Assembly: GCA_013416795.1 (NCBI GenBank)
Contig: RQSC01000024.1
Coordinates: 206,722 to 213,028 of the forward strand
Reading direction: 5' to 3'
Source: Prasinococcaceae sp. CCMP 1430
Taxonomy: Eukaryota; Plantae; Prasinodermophyta
Length of the DNA: 6,307 bases
Positions 342-6,307 of the stretch are shown here, piece after piece; positions within the stretch are counted from its first letter, which is position 1; each line of letters starts with the position of its first letter. The translations under genes were made by a program, and so were the position numbers. The notes below the pieces were generated by a model. That model made no database searches. It worked only from the letters and a program-made list of their open reading frames with translations, and had not been told where the DNA came from.

Positions 342-740
342 GCGCAGGCGAGGGAGGTGCGCCTGCTGCTGGTGAGGCACGCGCACTCGGAGCCCGCGGG
401 GGCGACGCGCGACCACGACCGGCCAATCACGACCGAGGGCGCGCGCTCGGCCGCGTCGCTGGCCGGTGCGCTCGCGGGCGCGGGCTGGCTGCCGCCGGAC
501 CTGATCCTGTGCTCCGACTCGGAGCGCACGCGCCAGACGCTCGCTGCGATGCGCGTGGCCGAGCCCGCCCTCGATGGCGTGCGCACCGAGTTTCTGGGGT
601 CCTTCTACATCGTCTCCACGCTCGACGGGGAGACACGGCGGCACCTGGAGGACGCGATCACCGCAGCGGCGACAGATCCCGAGGCGGACGCGCAGCTGGG
701 GACGGTGTGGGTGATGGGGCACAATATGGGCTGGAGCGAG
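342..740 (+). CDS. Histidine phosphatase superfamily protein (SixA-like / plant At3g52155-like), catalytic exon; true start unresolved
   Basis: The frame reads (AQAREV)RLLLVRHAHS...DHDRPIT...PDLILCSDSERTRQT...GSFYIVSTLDGET...TVWVMGHNMGWSE. This has the RHx phospho-His motif (His codon 378-380), DHDRP, the SxxxRTxQT segment and the GHN motif of SixA-type phosphatases. The ORF-track 'M' at 357 is GTG, and there is an in-frame TGA at 300-302 with no in-frame ATG between it and 357. Confidence 0.9.
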
Positions 741-990
741 GTGCGTGCTCGGCGAGTGGCGAGCGCTCAGGGACGCAGCGCGGGTGCCCAGGGGCGCCGC
801 ACACGCGCCTGCGCAAACGCTCGCCCGCGCGCACGCCCTCGCGCCGCGAGCGCGGATCTCCACGCCGTTCGCACGAGCGCCGCGCCGTGCGCGCGAGCCC
901 ATGCGGAGGCACGCACAGTCCCGCCCCAGCGACGCGCCCAGCGTGCCATCGCTGACGTACGGCCCACCTGCGCGCCCCACGGAGCTCTAG
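741..990 (+). other. Spliceosomal GT-AG intron (250 nt, phase 0)
   Basis: Donor GAG|GTGCGT at 740/741, branch-point-like GCTGAC at 951-956, acceptor CTAG| at 990. Splicing gives GHNMGWSE|AASELAGTEIKL, matching my recollection of the family consensus GHNxGWEEAAS. Confidence 0.88.
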
Positions 991-1218
991 GCTGCATCTG
1001 AGCTGGCGGGCACGGAGATCAAACTGCTCGAGGCGAGTGCTGTGGGCCTCGTGCAGGAGGCAGGCAGCTGGGAGGAGGCGATGCGCGGCAGCAAGGGGCG
1101 CTGGCAGATCGACGCGCAGGTCACCGGTGACGGAGGCGGCAAGGCCGCGCGCGCAGGCGGAGAGGAGGAGGGCGATGGGGGGTTCTCCATGCCTCCCGGG
1201 GCGCAGCCCGCTGCGTGA
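991..1218 (+). CDS. Histidine phosphatase (SixA-like), last exon (not in the ORF track)
   Basis: 76 codons: AASELAGTEIKLLEASAVGLVQEAGSWEEAMRGSKGRWQIDAQVTGDGGGKAARAGGEEEGDGGFSMPPGAQPAA*, with TGA at 1216-1218. The AAS..G..I.L....SWEEA...W pattern resembles the C-terminal part of plant At3g52155-like proteins. Confidence 0.85.
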   Translation, partial: AASELAGTEIKLLEASAVGLVQEAGSWEEAMRGSKGRWQIDAQVTGDGGGKAARAGGEEEGDGGFSMPPGAQPAA

Positions 1219-1387: not shown

Positions 1388-3103
1388 TCAGTCGAAGAAG
1401 TCCTCGAGGTCCACGCCGTCTGGGTGTGTCTCGGGCAGCATGATGGCCGGACCGTAGCGGCTGAGGTCAATGCTGTCCATGATCAGGTTCTCGTACGTCT
1501 CTGCCAGGTCCGTCTCGCCTATGAGCACCGCGCCCTGCATTTTCCCACGGACGAGAAGCACGCGCGCGAACTCCTCGCCCGGCGTGGAGCGCACGTACGT
1601 GACCACGTCCGCGGCGTCCACGTCCTCGAGCCCCTGCGCGTTGTACCTGCCCAGCAGGACTACGCGCAAGCCAAGAAACTCGGTAACGTGTGTGAAGAGG
1701 TCGAAGTTGAAGCCCAGCGCCATCTCGTCCGAGGCGCCGGCCATCACGCGGCCACAGTACGCGCCAAGCGCCTGCGCCTGCGACCACAGCCGCCACTGGA
1801 ACCAGTGACAGCCCTCCTCGCGCAGGCGCGCCCAGCGCGCGCAGCTGCACGCGTCGCCGGCGGCGTACACGCCATCCACGCTGGTGCGCATGAGGTCGTC
1901 AACCAGCAGACCGCCGTCCGCGTCCCGCTCGAAGCACTCGGGCAGCCACTGCGTGGCTGGCGCGACGCCCGTGGCGCATACGACGATGTCGACGCCGTAC
2001 GCCTCGCCGGTGGAGATCGTCGCCACGCAGCGCGAGCCGCTGCCGGGCGGCGCGTCGCGCAAATCGATCAGCTCGGCGCCGTAGGCGAGCTCGAAGCGCA
2101 CGCGAGCTCGTGTGGGCGCGGCGCCCCCGTCCGAGCCCTGTCCCTCCCCGCCGGGCAGCATGGTCGTCCACTTGGGCCCCACCGCATGGTGGAACTCGCC
2201 CGGCGCGTGTGCACGGGCTTCCGCGTCCTGGTCGGCGCCCTGCACTTCGCGCCCCGCCTCGCCGCCCCAGACTGCGCCAGGCGCGCCCGCTCGTCGCGCG
2301 CGCTTCCGAGAGCAAATGTCACCATCGGCACACACGTCGTCCATGTCCTCCTGGCCGCCGCTGGCGGCGCCAAGACATTGCGCCATGAACGCTGCGGCGT
2401 CGCGGTCGAAAAACGCGCCGCCGACGCCGCCGTCGGCGGCAGTGCGCACCGCCCATACGACACGCGCGACACCACCAGCGGACGCACCCACCTGCGACAG
2501 ATGTGCCGCAAGCTCCAACGCAATGCCACCGTTGCCGACCAGCAGGACGCTGAGGCCGCTGCCGTTGCCGCCGCCGTTGTTGCCACGCAACGCGCTGGCG
2601 AGTTCGCGCACGCTCGCCGCGTCTCGCACATAGTGCACGCATGCGTGGCGCGCATAGGCCGCTGTGGGCACGCGCGGCGCCGCGCCTGTCGCAACGCATA
2701 GCTTGCCGTACTCGATCACTCTCACGTCGTCGGCGCCGGTGCCGACGACAGTGATGGTGCCCGCAGCCGCGTCCACCGCAGTCGCAGCGCCCGCGACGAC
2801 GCACACGCCGTGCTTGGCGGCCCACTCGGCGACAGCGGCGTGTCGCGCGCCGACCTCGACCGCACGCGCCGTCACGCGCGCTCCTCGCTCAGCGACCGTC
2901 ACGCACTCGCCACCGGCGCACACGAGCGCGACACGCGGGCGACATGCTGGCGACGCGTTGCCGCCGTCTGCCTGTGGCTCGCCGCCTGCTTCCCGCAGGG
3001 CGCTGGCCGCCTCAGCCGCCGCCGACGTGCCACACACGCCGCCTCCAACGACGACAATGTCATACTTCTCCACGCATGCCATCGGCCCCTCCTCCCGTGC
3101 CAT
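1388..3103 (-). CDS. PYROXD1: Pyridine nucleotide-disulfide oxidoreductase domain-containing protein 1 (FAD/NAD(P)H flavoprotein), 571 aa, apparently intronless
   Basis: FAD-binding YDIVVVGGGVCG, KLCVATGAAP, second Rossmann motif LLVGNGGIALEL, AVGPKW, DIVVCATGVAP, VYAAGD, family-specific WFQWRLWSQAQALG, FDLFTHVTEFLGLRVVLLGRYNAQGL, GAVLIGETDLAETYENLI and acidic C-terminus DLEDFFD*. Start chosen at ATG 3103 (context gcgaagATGg). In-frame ATGs also exist at 3082, 3175, 3187 and 3262. Stop TGA at 1390-1388. Confidence 0.93.
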   Translation of the reverse strand: MAREEGPMACVEKYDIVVVGGGVCGTSAAAEAASALREAGGEPQADGGNASPACRPRVALVCAGGECVTVAERGARVTARAVEVGARHAAVAEWAAKHGVCVVAGAATAVDAAAGTITVVGTGADDVRVIEYGKLCVATGAAPRVPTAAYARHACVHYVRDAASVRELASALRGNNGGGNGSGLSVLLVGNGGIALELAAHLSQVGASAGGVARVVWAVRTAADGGVGGAFFDRDAAAFMAQCLGAASGGQEDMDDVCADGDICSRKRARRAGAPGAVWGGEAGREVQGADQDAEARAHAPGEFHHAVGPKWTTMLPGGEGQGSDGGAAPTRARVRFELAYGAELIDLRDAPPGSGSRCVATISTGEAYGVDIVVCATGVAPATQWLPECFERDADGGLLVDDLMRTSVDGVYAAGDACSCARWARLREEGCHWFQWRLWSQAQALGAYCGRVMAGASDEMALGFNFDLFTHVTEFLGLRVVLLGRYNAQGLEDVDAADVVTYVRSTPGEEFARVLLVRGKMQGAVLIGETDLAETYENLIMDSIDLSRYGPAIMLPETHPDGVDLEDFFD

Positions 3104-3169
3104 CTTCGCGGCGGGGGCCGCGGCACACCACGCGCAGCGGGCGCGGTGTGCCACCCGCGCCCGCGCAAG

Positions 3170-3188
3170 ATGCATGCATGCATGCATG
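3170..3188. repeat. (ATGC)n tetranucleotide microsatellite; 18-bp perfect palindrome containing RY/CATGCATG motifs
   Basis: atgcatgcatgcatgcatg; 3170-3187 is its own reverse complement. It lies in the spacer between the NSF-like stop and the PYROXD1 start. Confidence 0.9.
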
Positions 3189-3345
3189 GATGCGCGCGCC
3201 CCAGCGCGCCAGCGCAGGGATTGGTGCGCGCATCGGGGCCGGACTGCATATCTGTTGTACAAGCGTTAAGGGAGCATCGAGCGAGCACACCGTGCGCGAG
3301 GGGGCGCTCAGCCGCTCTATGGCACAAACAACGTGGGCGCCCGCC

Positions 3346-5466
3346 TCAGCGCGAGGGCACCGCAGCCGCCGCGGCCCCGGCGAGCCAGGGCGCGCTTGGC
3401 TCGCGCTCGGTTGGGCCCAGGCTGCCGAGCGTGGCCAGCACCTTGTGGAAGGTGGCCAGCGTGATGGCCTCGTCGGACTCGCGCATCTCATCGAGGCTGA
3501 GGCCGCAGCGGTGTGCGCAGTGGGCCAGCAGCTGCAGCAGGCGTTTGATGGGCACGGCACCGCCCAGTGCGGCGGCGGCCTCTCGCGCGTCGCTCGCGTT
3601 GAAGACGCGCATCTGGTGCATCACCTCGAGGATGTCCGCCGTGTCCAGCGGTGGCACGCTGAGCGTGACGTCGAACGCGTCCACCAGCCCCAAGCTGGCC
3701 ATCGCCTCACGCTGGGAGGTGGTGGCGATGACCACAACGCCCTTGCCGTCGCTAGCCGAGGGCGCCTCCAGCTTGGCGAGCAGTGCCTGCAGCGCCGCGT
3801 TGTTGTACGCGGGCCCCACCGGCGACCACTGCACGTGGCGTTCCAGGTCGTCCAGCACGATCACGCTTTTCTGCGAGCGCCCCGCGGTGTTGAAGAGCGC
3901 GGCGAGTGCGGTGGCGTGGCCGTCGCCGGAGCGGTCGGCATCTGCCGCGAGCGAGTCCGCCGTGGCCACCTGCACCAGCGGGAAGCTGCTGGCCGCGGCG
4001 AGCGTGGCGGCGAGCGCGCTCTTCCCAACGCCGCGCTCACCCTCCAGCAGCAGGCACGCGCGCGGCGAGCGGCCAGCGTCCACCTGCTTGATAAATGCCT
4101 CCGCCGCCGCCCGGAGCCTCTCGAAGGGGGCGCCGCGCGGCAACATTCCCAGCGGGCGCAGCGCCTCGAGCTGCGACGTCTGTGCGCCGTGGTGCGGCGT
4201 GACCTCCGCCAGCGCGCGGTCGAAGTCCGCCGCGCTCACGGCGATCTCGGCCTCGTCGGGCAGGCCCAGGCCAGCGCCGTGCACGCCGTGCGTCGCGGTG
4301 TCGCTCCTGTCGGGGTTGAGCATGCGGTCGAGCGCGAACGACGCCGCGGAGCGGCACACGCCCTCGAGCTCCGCCCCCGAGAAATTTTGCGTGCGCGCGG
4401 CCACCGCGCCCAGGTCCACGTCGTCGCCCAGGAAGTCCGACTCGCGCATGCCGCGCGTGTGGATGTCGAGGATCTGCGCGCGGCCGCGCTCGTCGGGCAG
4501 GCCGACCTCGATGTCCACCTCGAGGCGGCCCGGGCGCAGCAGCGCCGAGTCGAGCAGCTCGCGCCGGTTGGTGATGCCGATGATGAGCACGTTGTTCAGC
4601 GCCGACACGCCGTCGATCTTGGTGAGCAGCTGGTTGACGATGGTGTCCTGCATTGCGCTGGTGGACGAGTTGGAGGAGCCGCGCTGCCTGCAGATGGCGT
4701 CGATCTCGTCGAATATGATGACGTGGAGGTTTGAGTTCTCGCCGTAGCGCGCGTAGTCGCGCTCGGCATCGGCGAAGAGCTTGCGAATGCGCTGCTCACT
4801 CTCGCCCACGAACTTGTCCAGGATCTCCGGGCCGTTGATGATCTTGGGCTCCTTGTTCCCCCCGAGCATCGCGCCCAGCTTGCGCGCGATGAGCGTCTTG
4901 CCGGTGCCCGGCGGGCCGTGCAGGACGATGCCGCGCGCGTGCTTCAGCCCCAGCCGCCGCGCGACGTCCGGCGGCGCCGCGCGCGACGCGAACGCGCGCC
5001 GGAAGAGCACGCGGAACTGGTCGTCGAGCCCGCCGATGCCCAGCTCGGCGAGCTTGTCCACGCTGAGCAAGGGAGCGGTGGGCCGCCCCGACTCGGGCTC
5101 GGGCTCCGCCCACGCGGGGCTCTCATCCTTGTGCTTGTACGCGGGCCCCGCGCCCCTGGCCGCGGCGGGCTTCGGGGCCTTGCTGACGACGAACTTGGAC
5201 GGCCGCAGCTTCGGCCCGTCGTCGCCGCCCTTCTTGGCGGGCCTGGCCGCGGCGCCGGCCTCCTTGGCCTCCACCTCGACGCCGCCGACGACGAACTTCG
5301 GCCCGCCAATCTCGCCGGGCCCGGGCGCGCGCGGCGGGCCCTCCGCGGCGTACGCGCGCGACAGCAGATCCGACGCGACGCGCGCGAGCGCGCGAACAAA
5401 AAAGCGATACCAATCCGATCGGCCGGATTTGCGCGGGGGTGGGGCCCGGCTCTGCGGGCCGGCCAC
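3346..5466 (-). CDS. NSF: NSF/Sec18-like vesicle-fusing AAA+ ATPase paralog (D1+D2 only, no NSF N-domain); 5' end uncertain (frame open to 5640, candidate GTG at 5466)
   Basis: D1: LGIGGLD-FRRAFASR (from 5043), Walker A GPPGTGKT (4917-4894), NGPEILDKFVGESE, Walker B VIIFDEIDAIC, DTIVNQLLTKIDGV and SRH TNRRELLDSALLRPGRLEV. D2: LLLEGERGVGKS (4041-4018), VIVLDDLER and WSPVGPAYNNAALQALL, typical of the NSF D2 domain. Stop TGA at 3348-3346. No intron is needed between 5043 and the stop. Confidence 0.92.
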   Translation of the reverse strand: MAGPQSRAPPPRKSGRSDWYRFFVRALARVASDLLSRAYAAEGPPRAPGPGEIGGPKFVVGGVEVEAKEAGAAARPAKKGGDDGPKLRPSKFVVSKAPKPAAARGAGPAYKHKDESPAWAEPEPESGRPTAPLLSVDKLAELGIGGLDDQFRVLFRRAFASRAAPPDVARRLGLKHARGIVLHGPPGTGKTLIARKLGAMLGGNKEPKIINGPEILDKFVGESEQRIRKLFADAERDYARYGENSNLHVIIFDEIDAICRQRGSSNSSTSAMQDTIVNQLLTKIDGVSALNNVLIIGITNRRELLDSALLRPGRLEVDIEVGLPDERGRAQILDIHTRGMRESDFLGDDVDLGAVAARTQNFSGAELEGVCRSAASFALDRMLNPDRSDTATHGVHGAGLGLPDEAEIAVSAADFDRALAEVTPHHGAQTSQLEALRPLGMLPRGAPFERLRAAAEAFIKQVDAGRSPRACLLLEGERGVGKSALAATLAAASSFPLVQVATADSLAADADRSGDGHATALAALFNTAGRSQKSVIVLDDLERHVQWSPVGPAYNNAALQALLAKLEAPSASDGKGVVVIATTSQREAMASLGLVDAFDVTLSVPPLDTADILEVMHQMRVFNASDAREAAAALGGAVPIKRLLQLLAHCAHRCGLSLDEMRESDEAITLATFHKVLATLGSLGPTEREPSAPWLAGAAAAAVPSR

Positions 5467-5542
5467 GAGGGGCGAGGGGGCTTGTTCGGTTTGATTTGTT
5501 TGAGTGGTGCTTGGTGTTGCGAGCGGAAGGAGCGGGTGAGGT

Positions 5543-5574
5543 GGGGGAGGGGCGGGCGGGGGGCGGGGGGGGGG
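5543..5574 (+). repeat. G-tract cluster (G5-A-G4-C-G3-C-G6-C-G10), G-quadruplex motif; C-rich on the sense strand of the NSF-like gene
   Basis: Five G-runs of at least 3 separated by 1-nt loops, read directly from the sequence. Confidence 0.8.
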
Positions 5575-5767
5575 AGGAATGGGGACGCTGCGGTACACCT
5601 CGCTGTTCGCGTTCTGACGGACGTACGAAAACGAAAACACTCAAAGCACTTTAACGATTTTTCGTATGCAGCCGCCGCTGCCACGGGCGCTGCGCGTGCG
5701 CGTCTCTGCGCGTCGCGCACACGTAAAAGGGGTGCAACTGGCGCACTGCTGAGCTATCCGATTTCTT

Positions 5768-6307
5768 TCAGGGTTCAGGGCTCGGGGCCGCGGTGTCGCC
5801 AGCAGCCCCCTCATCGACTTTTCCTTCATCCTCCTCGCCCTCGCCTGCCTTCCGGCTCGCGCTCCTCGCCACGCGCGCGCTCCTGAGCTTGGACAGCTTG
5901 GCGCGCGCCACGCGCCGCGCCGCCGCGCCGTGCTCGAGCACCGCCGACAGCACGGGAATTGCGAACACCATGCCCGAGGTGACCACCAGCAGGGCGCCGA
6001 TCACCCGCCGGTCGTTCGTGCCGCCGACGGTCTCCACCTTGACCAGCAGGCCGGCGAAGAGGATGAGCGCGATCTCGACGAGCGCCGCCTGTGCGGAGCG
6101 GTCCACCGCGGCGTCCGCGAACGGGCTGAGCGCCAGGTTGGCCACGAGAAAGAAGCAGGCGACGAGAAGCCCAACGGCGATCTGGCCGCTCCCGCCGGCG
6201 TCGACGAAGACCAGCGCGCCGGTCAGCACCAGCTTGCGCAGCAGCTCCACCAGCTCCCAATACCAGCACTCGGTGTGGTAGGAGGCGAAGAGCTGGCCGC
6301 AGTGGCG
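5768..6307 (-). CDS. Multi-pass membrane protein with TRP-like C-terminal domain, 3' end only (continues beyond the window)
   Basis: The frame is open from the window edge: RHCGQLFASYHTECWYWELVELLRKLVLTGALVFV... The G-LF--Y----WYWE-VELLRKL motif is followed by about four hydrophobic helices and a basic-then-acidic tail. This pattern is typical of TRP-like (PF06011-type) C-terminal domains in algal and protist proteins. Stop TGA at 5770-5768. Confidence 0.72.
   Translation of the reverse strand, partial: RHCGQLFASYHTECWYWELVELLRKLVLTGALVFVDAGGSGQIAVGLLVACFFLVANLALSPFADAAVDRSAQAALVEIALILFAGLLVKVETVGGTNDRRVIGALLVVTSGMVFAIPVLSAVLEHGAAARRVARAKLSKLRSARVARSASRKAGEGEEDEGKVDEGAAGDTAAPSPEP

What the first reader, a model, noticed from the sequence alone, without database searches (positions are those of the whole stretch)
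3346..5466. NSF/Sec18 paralog with intact D1-D2 motors but no N-domain, replaced by a presequence-like and low-complexity segment
Seen: D1 (Walker A, DE Walker B, SRH arginine fingers, FVG pore loop) and D2 (GKS, DDLE) are complete and unmistakably NSF-type. Upstream of LGIGG there are only about 110-140 Gly/Ala/Pro/Lys-rich residues, preceded by YRFFVRALARVASDLLSRAY|AA. The next gene's stop is at 5768, leaving no room for a hidden N-domain exon in the spacer. Established: canonical NSF needs its roughly 200-aa N-domain to bind SNAP/SNARE complexes, and R-x-Y|A matches the R-3 mitochondrial presequence cleavage motif. Inference: this may be an NSF-derived unfoldase or remodeller retargeted to mitochondria (or plastid), where there are no SNAREs, acting on an unknown substrate. 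I do not know of a described system of this kind.
Basis: partly seen in the sequence, partly recalled or inferred. Interest (0 to 1): 0.75.

Follow-up and report, generated by a model that had tools for sequence, protein, structure and literature searches.

The report
NSF relative without its N-domain
This green alga carries a copy of NSF, the ring machine that normally pulls apart membrane-fusion proteins, with the cargo-binding front end replaced by what looks like an organelle delivery tag; at least eight related algal sequences share this build, so it is probably an undescribed organelle machine, although this copy has no normal start codon.

Summary
The minus-strand ORF ending at 3346 encodes complete NSF-type D1 and D2 ATPase domains (E 1e-127 to solved NSF, matching from NSF residue 219 on). 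It has no N-domain by Pfam, sequence or AlphaFold2.

This is not an isolated case. Eight relatives share the build: seven from metagenomes, plus Tetraselmis striata TSEL_013725. Together with the window copy they form one clade (support 100/100), apart from canonical NSFs. T. striata also keeps a canonical NSF, so the N-less form is a true paralog.

- **Shared traits:** an insert of about 10 residues in the D1 lid, an altered D2 motif, and a short conserved motif (core GPPRAP..PG..GGP.F) in a disordered linker.
- **Targeting:** all six relatives whose 5' ends could be read start with ATG plus an Arg/Ala-rich leader (net +4 to +7, against a median of -1 for canonical NSFs). This supports organelle targeting, but mitochondrion versus plastid is open and nothing has been localised.
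the window copy has no ATG in any frame for 641 bases upstream, and no in-frame ATG before Walker A. An in-frame GTG at 5466 aligns with the closest relative's ATG.
- **Selection:** the ORF body is under purifying selection.

The scan already holds a note on this AUG problem (s1-389971) and a note on a different NSF-derived paralog elsewhere in this genome (s1-405974).

The parts
3346..5466 (-). Candidate coding region of the N-domain-less NSF paralog: 706 codons plus the TGA stop at 3346-3348, read from the in-frame GTG at 5466.
   Evidence: ORF. NSF D1-D2 match. GC3 is at least 0.85 from about 5400 downstream and 0.94 over the body. dN/dS is well below 1 against the closest relative.
5464..5466 (-). 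In-frame GTG, the best candidate for the start position. Its context has C at -3 and G at +4.
   Evidence: In a global alignment it falls opposite the ATG of the closest relative's first exon. No ATG is available.
5127..5767 (-). A 641-base stretch with no ATG in any frame on this strand. It spans the intergenic leader and the N-terminal coding part.
   Evidence: 0 ATG observed against 4.6 expected, reached in 0.8% of shuffles. It is the only such 641-base stretch among 114 tested on this strand.
5350..5415 (-). Presequence-like amphipathic helix, residues 18-39 of the reading from 5466. It ends in an R-x-Y|A site at 5347-5358.
   Evidence: Highest hydrophobic moment (0.82) falls here, and the net charge is +6 over the first 40 residues. 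It is the only part of the N-terminal 130 residues that AlphaFold2 models as a helix, at pLDDT 55-68.
5293..5340 (-). Conserved short linear motif (core GPPRAP..PG..GGP.F) just after the presumed cleavage site.
   Evidence: The same motif lies at the same relative position in L001 exon 1, Tetraselmis P0122, L015 and L009. A variant, DPRWAGPG, occurs in P0029, P0051 and P0052.
5044..5292 (-). Gly/Ala/Pro/Lys-rich disordered linker that stands in place of the N-domain.
   Evidence: pLDDT below 50. No Pfam hit. This is the fastest-evolving part, with dN 0.58.
4174..5043 (-). D1 AAA+ domain. It starts at LGIGGLD (5023-5043) and holds Walker A (4894-4917), the pore loop with Phe (4795-4815), Walker B (4699-4722), sensor-1 (4564-4578) and the arginine fingers (4525-4536).
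   Evidence: Purifying selection, with dN 0.14 and dS 0.67.
4261..4305 (-). Clade-specific insert in the D1 lid (H-G-x-H-G-x-G-L-G core), absent from canonical NSFs.
   Evidence: Alignment. Present in P0001, P0029, P0051, P0052 and P0122. Modelled as a low-confidence loop at residues 391-400.
3349..4173 (-). D2 AAA+ domain. It holds Walker A with GKS (4018-4041), Walker B DDLE (3841-3864) and the clade signature SPVGPAY.NAALQAL (3781-3825).
   Evidence: dN 0.24 and dS 0.72.

Best explanation
The gene belongs to a conserved green-algal family of NSF paralogs that lost the SNAP/SNARE-binding N-domain.

**What replaced the N-domain (shown in relatives).**
- A cleavable-looking Arg/Ala-rich organellar leader.
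- A conserved short motif, with core GPPRAP..PG..GGP.F.
- A disordered Gly/Ala/Pro/Lys-rich linker.

**Proposed mechanism (inferred).**
- The protein is imported into an organelle. I lean towards the mitochondrial matrix; a plastid is the main alternative.
- It assembles through D2 into a double-ring hexamer, as NSF does.
- It uses ATP hydrolysis in D1 and the aromatic pore loop to thread and unfold, or take apart, a non-SNARE substrate.
- The conserved N-terminal motif takes over the recruiting role of the lost N-domain, binding either the substrate or an adaptor.

**The window copy.** The ancestral ATG position now reads GTG (5466). The protein is therefore made from a non-AUG start, or from an unrecognised upstream exon, or this copy has recently lost expression.
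For: **NSF identity without an N-domain.**
- D1+D2 are specifically NSF-type (E 1e-127 against 1e-90 for Cdc48/VAT; Foldseek).
- All catalytic motifs are present.
- There is no N-domain by Pfam or AlphaFold2.

**A clade, not a one-off.**
- Nine N-less sequences are monophyletic at 100/100 and at SH-aLRT 99.
- They share derived traits: the D1-lid insert and the D2 signature.
- Inside the clade, window+Tara is sister to the members that include the only named chlorophyte (Tetraselmis). This fits vertical descent.
- Tetraselmis striata has both the paralog and a canonical NSF.

**Targeting.**
- Six of six relatives have an ATG followed by an Arg-rich, nearly acid-free leader, net +4 to +7. Canonical NSFs have a median of -1.
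- The motif after the leader is conserved.

**Selection.** dN/dS is about 0.2-0.3 in D1 and D2.

**Mechanistic background.** In NSF the N-domains and alpha-SNAP position the SNAREs, and the D1 pore-loop Tyr294 is needed for disassembly (PMC6160233).
Against: - There is no localisation, expression or activity data for any member.
- Green-algal plastid and mitochondrial leaders look alike, and no predictor was run.
- The window copy has no AUG. The GTG has a poor -3 base, and GC3 is only 0.65-0.70 between 5466 and 5400. This particular gene may be silent or read differently.
- No transcript-derived copy was found.
- The clade sits on a long stem, so its origin relative to canonical NSFs is unresolved.
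- Whether this genome has a canonical NSF was not established.
Confidence: 0.55

Rival explanations
1. Same family, but plastid-targeted. The leader would be a chloroplast transit peptide, and the machine would work in the stroma or at the envelope or thylakoids, for example in protein import, quality control or membrane remodelling.
For: Leaders rich in Ala, Arg and Ser, starting MA.. or MS.., are also typical of green-algal transit peptides (sequences). Every identified member comes from photosynthetic green algae or from algal-looking metagenome contigs, which have high GC and a PEP carboxylase neighbour.
Against: An R-x-aromatic|A site directly before the conserved motif in two distant members, and strongly amphipathic Arg helices, fit mitochondrial presequences somewhat better. 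Neither point is decisive.
Confidence: 0.25
2. The family is real, but the window copy is a recently disabled gene. The start codon mutated from ATG to GTG, perhaps under the GC-biased pressure of this roughly 72% GC genome, and no protein is made.
For: There is no ATG in any frame for 641 bases, and no in-frame ATG before Walker A. Every relative keeps its ATG. No transcript-derived protein turned up.
Against: The 706-codon ORF is intact, GC3 is 0.94, and there is long-term purifying selection. An ATG-free leader is what a gene relying on a weak start would need. Loss would have to be very recent to leave no other lesion.
Confidence: 0.15
3. The window gene starts in an unrecognised upstream exon. 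The only upstream ATGs on this strand near the gene are at 5829 and 5814, inside the 3' end of the neighbouring gene. An intron would then remove the stop at 5641-5643.
For: Both ATGs are in the ORF frame, and GT..AG pairs that keep the frame exist, for example 5655 or 5649 to 5452 behind a pyrimidine-rich tract. The closest relative has a 503-base intron in this gene and only about 60 bases between its ATG and the upstream gene's stop.
Against: The candidate exon overlaps another gene's coding end. Its product shows no similarity to relatives' leaders. The joined stretches have non-coding-like GC3. The splice sites are weak guesses.
Confidence: 0.1
4. A cytosolic N-less NSF that mixes into, or competes with, canonical NSF hexamers and so tunes SNARE recycling. 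The window copy might then start at the in-frame CTG at 5367 and carry no leader.
For: D2, the oligomerisation ring, is conserved. The CTG at 5367 has a purine at -3, and GC3 is clearly coding only from about 5400.
Against: ATG-initiated Arg-rich leaders are conserved in six relatives. The clade-specific changes in D2 (SPVGPAY.NAALQAL) argue for a separate homo-oligomer rather than mixing.
Confidence: 0.07
5. Artefact: a canonical NSF whose N-domain exons were lost through mis-assembly or lie elsewhere.
For: Nothing beyond the missing start codon.
Against: The upstream gene ends at 5768, leaving no room. The architecture is the same in 16 Tara contigs and in four other contig sets. A eukaryotic gene model in Tetraselmis coexists with a canonical NSF. 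The clade-specific signatures are present.
Confidence: 0.03

Closest known systems
NSF / Sec18 (vesicle-fusing ATPase, type II AAA+)
   Same: D1 and D2 are about 45-50% identical to canonical plant and algal NSFs and 40-41% identical to solved NSF/Sec18 chains. The domain order is the same, as are Walker A/B, the aromatic pore loop, the arginine fingers and an ATP-binding D2.
   Different: There is no N-domain, which is the element that binds alpha-SNAP and SNAREs (PMC6160233). Instead there is an Arg-rich leader, a short conserved motif and a disordered linker. There is also a D1-lid insert and an altered D2 motif. The family forms its own clade.
Cdc48/p97 paralogs retargeted to organelles (for example the symbiont-specific Cdc48 of complex plastids; from my own knowledge, not checked here)
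   Same: A cytosolic type II AAA+ unfoldase duplicated and sent to another compartment by an added N-terminal targeting sequence.
   Different: Those paralogs keep their N-domain and their ERAD-like partners and occur in algae with secondary plastids. Here the parent is NSF, the N-domain is gone, and the hosts are primary green algae.
Organellar double-ring unfoldases Hsp78/ClpB and ClpC
   Same: Two AAA+ rings, presequence-directed import, and substrate threading by pore-loop aromatics. This is the kind of job the N-less NSF may do.
   Different: These belong to an unrelated AAA+ clade (Clp/Hsp100) with its own N-domain and middle domain. The similarity is functional analogy only.
Second NSF-derived paralog in the same genome (scan note s1-405974: signal-like segment plus IPT/TIG-like domains in place of the N-domain)
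   Same: It also carries NSF D1-D2 with the N-domain replaced. This suggests that NSF has been repurposed more than once in this lineage.
   Different: It has a different front end (secretory-type signal and folded domains) and lies on a different piece of the genome. I did not examine it.

Membership tests
NSF/Sec18 family (canonical) | N-terminal domain (double-psi barrel plus alpha-beta roll; Pfam CDC48_N/CDC48_2) that binds SNAP-SNARE | tested here: not met
   No Pfam hit in the whole ORF or in the 141 N-terminal residues. A canonical algal NSF used as a control gives weak CDC48_N and CDC48_2 hits. The PDB alignment starts at NSF residue 219. AlphaFold2 models residues 1-130 as disordered.
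NSF/Sec18 family (canonical) | D1 AAA+ domain with Walker A/B, aromatic pore loop and arginine fingers, closest to NSF D1 | tested here: met
   The pore-loop aromatic is Phe rather than Tyr, and Trp in some clade members.
NSF/Sec18 family (canonical) | D2 AAA+ domain of NST-type order: nucleotide-binding oligomerisation ring following D1 | tested here: met
   GKS Walker A and DDLE Walker B. The structural match covers both rings.
NSF/Sec18 family (canonical) | Groups with orthologous NSFs in a tree | tested here: not met
   It falls in a separate 100/100 clade of N-less proteins, outside the canonical green plus haptophyte NSFs when rooted on Acrasis. The long stem leaves the depth of the split unsure.
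NSF/Sec18 family (canonical) | SNAP-dependent SNARE disassembly activity | not testable with these tools
   This needs biochemistry.
N-domain-less NSF paralog clade (defined here) | D1-lid insert, D2 motif SPVGPAY.NAALQAL, and a short N-terminal region with the GPPRAP/DPRWAGPG motif | tested here: met
   The window has all three.
Mitochondrial presequence-bearing precursor | Initiator Met followed by a positively charged, acid-poor amphipathic helix | tested here: inconclusive
   The helix, charge (+6) and hydrophobic moment are present, but there is no ATG and only an in-frame GTG. The feature is met in six relatives.
Mitochondrial presequence-bearing precursor | R-2 or R-3 processing site | tested here: met
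   R-A-Y|A at 5347-5358. R-R-F|A lies at the matching place in Tetraselmis P0122. It is a short motif, so chance matches are common.
Mitochondrial presequence-bearing precursor | Import into mitochondria | not testable with these tools
   No TargetP, MitoFates or PredAlgo was available here, and no localisation data were found.

The most novel reading that the evidence does not exclude
Green algae (Prasinodermophyta and Chlorophyta) have kept, since before those two phyla split, a second NSF-derived double-ring AAA+ machine. It works inside a SNARE-free organelle and finds its substrate through a short linear motif instead of an N-domain. In Prasinoderma it is translated from a GUG codon at the ancestral start position.
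Probability: 0.35. Interest if true: 0.75.

Novelty: new variant of a known kind. Interest (0 to 1): 0.62.

Why it matters
NSF is usually treated as a single-purpose, near-universal eukaryotic enzyme whose N-domain ties it to SNAP and SNAREs.

- **New biology.** A conserved paralog that has dropped this domain and gained an organellar leader would be a new organelle AAA+ remodeller with an unknown client. It would also be a clear case of a trafficking motor being repurposed.
- **Testable handle.** The short conserved motif can be used directly for pull-downs.
- **Annotation.** Public pipelines name these proteins 'vesicle-fusing ATPase', which is probably wrong as a statement of function.
- **Start codon.** The missing AUG in this genome is a concrete test case for non-AUG initiation, or for start-codon erosion in a very GC-rich genome.

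Tried and rejected
- **Transcript-derived or annotated copy of this gene.** The full-length word search and an N-terminal fragment search found nothing closer than 74% identity. The true 5' end stays unknown.
- **Canonical NSF of this genome.** The scan notes hold none. The high-GC canonical NSFs P0147 and P0135 group with trebouxiophytes, not with this lineage. This point is unresolved.
- **Organism names for the metagenomic members.** Two cluster look-ups gave names only for Tetraselmis.
- **Upstream-exon models.** Enumeration found frame-keeping GT..AG pairs, but none is convincing.
- **Short 70-base intron (5410-5341) that would remove the helix.** I rejected it by reading the sequence: its length is not a multiple of three, and the upstream frame runs into the neighbour's stop.
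- **Three-frame tblastn of the upstream region against relatives.** It was swamped by low-complexity matches and was replaced by direct reading.
- **First tree.** Long branches (Phytophthora, an unnamed transcript) attracted the clade. I rebuilt the tree without them. A mixture-model 'careful' run was killed by the sandbox.
- I redid the step from files by coordinates.
- **Literature.** Three full-text searches found no description of an N-less or organellar NSF.
- **Not run: the large representative-protein search.** It returns no names, so it could not settle the taxonomic range.
- **Not run: joined spliced model.** The closest relative's two exons were handled separately by reference throughout, and the joined model was not sent to any tool.
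Full report
**What is in the window**

The window is about 72% G+C. On the minus strand an ORF runs from an in-frame stop at 5641-5643 down to the TGA at 3346-3348.

- Pfam finds two AAA domains and an AAA lid, and neither CDC48_N nor CDC48_2.
- Against all PDB sequences the best matches are NSF (E 1.4e-127) and yeast Sec18 (8e-123). These are well ahead of VAT, Cdc48 and p97 (about 1e-90 to 1e-82).
- The alignment starts at NSF residue 219, the N-D1 linker, and runs to the end of D2.
- An AlphaFold2 model built on 46 aligned sequences is confident for D1-D2. It is below pLDDT 50 for the first 130 residues, apart from one helix at residues 17-42.
- Foldseek returns only NSF and Sec18 chains at the top.
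- The same-strand upstream ORF stops at 5768 and is a hydrophobic, membrane-protein-like tail with no Pfam match.

- On this strand there is no ATG in any frame between 5767 and 5127.
- The only upstream ATGs (5829, 5814) lie inside the neighbouring gene's last codons and run into the stop at 5641-5643.
- The first in-frame ATG (4869) comes after Walker A.
- Zero ATG in 641 bases, against 4.6 expected, occurs in 0.8% of shuffles. It occurs in only this one of 114 such stretches on the strand.
- Third-position G+C is 0.4-0.5 upstream of 5490, 0.65-0.70 between 5466 and 5400, and at least 0.85 from about 5400 on. The body averages 0.94.
- The scan already holds a note on this point (s1-389971). 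I checked it and it holds.

**Relatives**

The word search and a profile search returned thousands of canonical NSFs at about 45-52% identity. A few proteins score higher or share odd features:

| Protein | Source |
|---|---|
| P0001 | Tara Oceans contigs, 74% identical to the window protein |
| P0029, P0051, P0052, P0121, P0129, P0289 | Other metagenomes |
| P0122 | Tetraselmis striata gene model TSEL_013725 |

All of them lack an N-domain.

They share features absent from canonical NSFs:
- an insert of about ten residues in the D1 lid, with an H-G-x-H-G-x-G-L-G core;
- a changed D2 motif, SPVGPAY.NAALQAL, where canonical NSFs have IGPRFSN..LQ.

Trees on D1-D2:
- In a quick mixture-model tree of 43 rows the eight N-less rows form one clade (SH-aLRT 99). 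That clade was drawn towards other long branches.
- In a careful LG+G4 tree of 31 rows without those branches, nine N-less rows are one clade at 100/100. Canonical green and haptophyte NSFs lie on the other side (87/95) when rooted on Acrasis.
- Inside the clade, window+Tara is sister to the rest, which includes Tetraselmis, the only named chlorophyte. This fits vertical descent. The stem is long, so the age of the duplication is open.

Other points:
- Tetraselmis striata has both this protein and a canonical NSF (P0284, TSEL_022625), which does give weak CDC48_N and CDC48_2 hits. The N-less form is therefore a paralog, not a replacement, in at least one species.
- The protein-atlas look-up lists two mainly chlorophyte clusters of more than 50 members each, with AAA and lid domains only.
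- Public pipelines call these proteins 'vesicle-fusing ATPase'.

**The N-terminal region in relatives**

*Closest relative (L001-L008).*
- The D1 ORF opens directly after a stop, at the point matching window position about 5215.
- A different frame upstream holds an ATG at L001:1364 and 87 codons whose end matches the window's 5340-5290 region.
- A 503-base GT..AG interval (L001:1625-2127, phase 0 at both ends) joins the two.
- The same landmarks at the same spacing recur in all eight loci from independent samples.
- The window has no intron there. I kept the two exons apart in every tool call and did not submit the joined model.

*Other relatives.*
- Reading upstream in frame in L009, L013 and L015 finds ATGs at 4803, 3462 and 6268.
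- P0122 and P0129 start with Met in their own models.

*Leaders.*
- All six leaders are Arg/Ala/Leu/Ser-rich. They carry net +4 to +7 in the first 40 residues with at most one acidic residue.
- 26 canonical NSFs have a median of -1.
- The window read from 5466 scores +6.

*Conserved motif.*
- After the leader comes a short conserved motif with core GPPRAP..PG..GGP followed by an aromatic residue. It is present in the window (5293-5340), L001, Tetraselmis, L015 and L009.
- A second, related DP(R/L)WAGPG motif occurs in one subclade.
- An R-x-aromatic|A site lies 4-5 residues before the motif in both the window and Tetraselmis.

**Is the window copy alive?**

Against L001, dN and dS are as follows:

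| Region | dN | dS |
|---|---|---|
| D1 | 0.14 | 0.67 |
| D2 | 0.24 | 0.72 |
| Linker | 0.58 | 1.07 |

- With such strong codon bias, dS is if anything underestimated.
- The body has therefore been under purifying selection, and it has no frame breaks over 706 codons.
- In a global alignment the GTG at 5466 falls opposite the relative's ATG. This fits an A-to-G change at the ancestral start.
- Whether GUG is used, an upstream exon supplies the AUG (one search lists frame-keeping but unconvincing splice pairs), or the gene has just been silenced cannot be decided without RNA or peptide data.
- No transcript-derived copy was found.

**How it most likely works**

*Shown.* The protein is an NSF-type double AAA+ protein with an intact catalytic D1 and a nucleotide-binding D2. 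It has no SNAP/SNARE-binding domain. It is conserved as a separate family whose other members carry an organellar-type leader.

*Established for NSF.* The N-domains together with alpha-SNAP position the SNARE bundle over D1. The D1 pore-loop tyrosine grips the threaded chain, and Y294A or Y294L mutations abolish most disassembly without changing ATPase activity or the hexamer (PMC6160233).

*Inferred.*
- The paralog is imported into a SNARE-free organelle.
- It forms a hexamer through D2.
- It threads a different client through D1.
- The conserved N-terminal motif acts as the recruiting element.

I lean towards mitochondria because of the R-3-type site and the amphipathic Arg helices. Green-algal plastid leaders are similar, however, and plastid targeting remains a serious rival.

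**Comparison with known systems, and novelty**

- The motor is NSF. It fails the membership test for canonical NSF on the N-domain and on tree position.
- The nearest analogy is the retargeting of Cdc48 paralogs to complex plastids. This rests on my own knowledge and was not checked here.
- Three full-text searches found no description of an N-less or organellar NSF.
- I rate it a new variant of a known kind.

**Organism**

The organism name Prasinoderma coloniale comes from another agent's note (s1-409080). I did not verify it. The same scan reports a different NSF-derived paralog elsewhere in this genome (s1-405974), which I did not examine.

**Limits**

- There are no targeting predictors, expression data or localisation data.
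- A canonical NSF in this genome was neither found nor excluded.
- The taxonomic range beyond green algae is unknown.
- The tree root and the depth of the split are unsure.

Noticed in passing
window 5127-5767 (minus strand): A 641-base stretch has no ATG in any frame (4.6 expected, reached in 0.8% of shuffles). It includes a long C-rich tract at about 5520-5590 just upstream of the candidate start.
   Followed up: partly
L001:1625-2127 (and the same interval in L002-L008): The closest relative has a 503-base GT..AG intron (GTACGC...TATAG, phase 0) inside the N-terminal linker. The window gene is continuous there, so this is an intron gain or loss between close relatives. In that relative only about 60 bases separate the upstream WD40 gene's stop from this gene's ATG.
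   Followed up: partly
L009:7541-11035 and L015:8814-12671: In two different metagenomic lineages the N-less NSF gene is followed on the same strand by a long (1164-1285 aa) PEP carboxylase gene. This looks like conserved gene order.
   Followed up: no
P0122 (Tetraselmis striata TSEL_013725), about residues 185-215: The public gene model carries an odd stretch of about 25 residues between Walker A and the pore loop that no relative has. It looks like a retained intron in the model.
   Followed up: no
window 1388-3262 (minus strand): The downstream neighbour is a 624-codon ORF with a split Pyr_redox_2 match (E 1.8e-24), that is, a pyridine nucleotide-disulphide oxidoreductase with long Ala/Gly-rich inserts. 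About 85 bases separate it from the NSF-like stop.
   Followed up: no
window 357-1001 (plus strand): This ORF has a histidine phosphatase (His_Phos_1) match only over its first 65 residues (E 2.7e-7). The rest is Arg/Ala-rich, so a frame change or intron is likely.
   Followed up: no
window 5768-6307 (minus strand): This is the 3' end of an upstream gene that encodes several hydrophobic helices and an acidic tail, with no Pfam match. It runs off the window. The only upstream ATGs in the NSF-like frame (5829, 5814) lie inside it.
   Followed up: partly
protein atlas, rank 6: A diatom-dominated cluster of 694-aa AAA + AAA_lid proteins scores 0.95 to the window protein. It may be a separate N-less NSF-like family in algae with complex plastids.
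   Followed up: no
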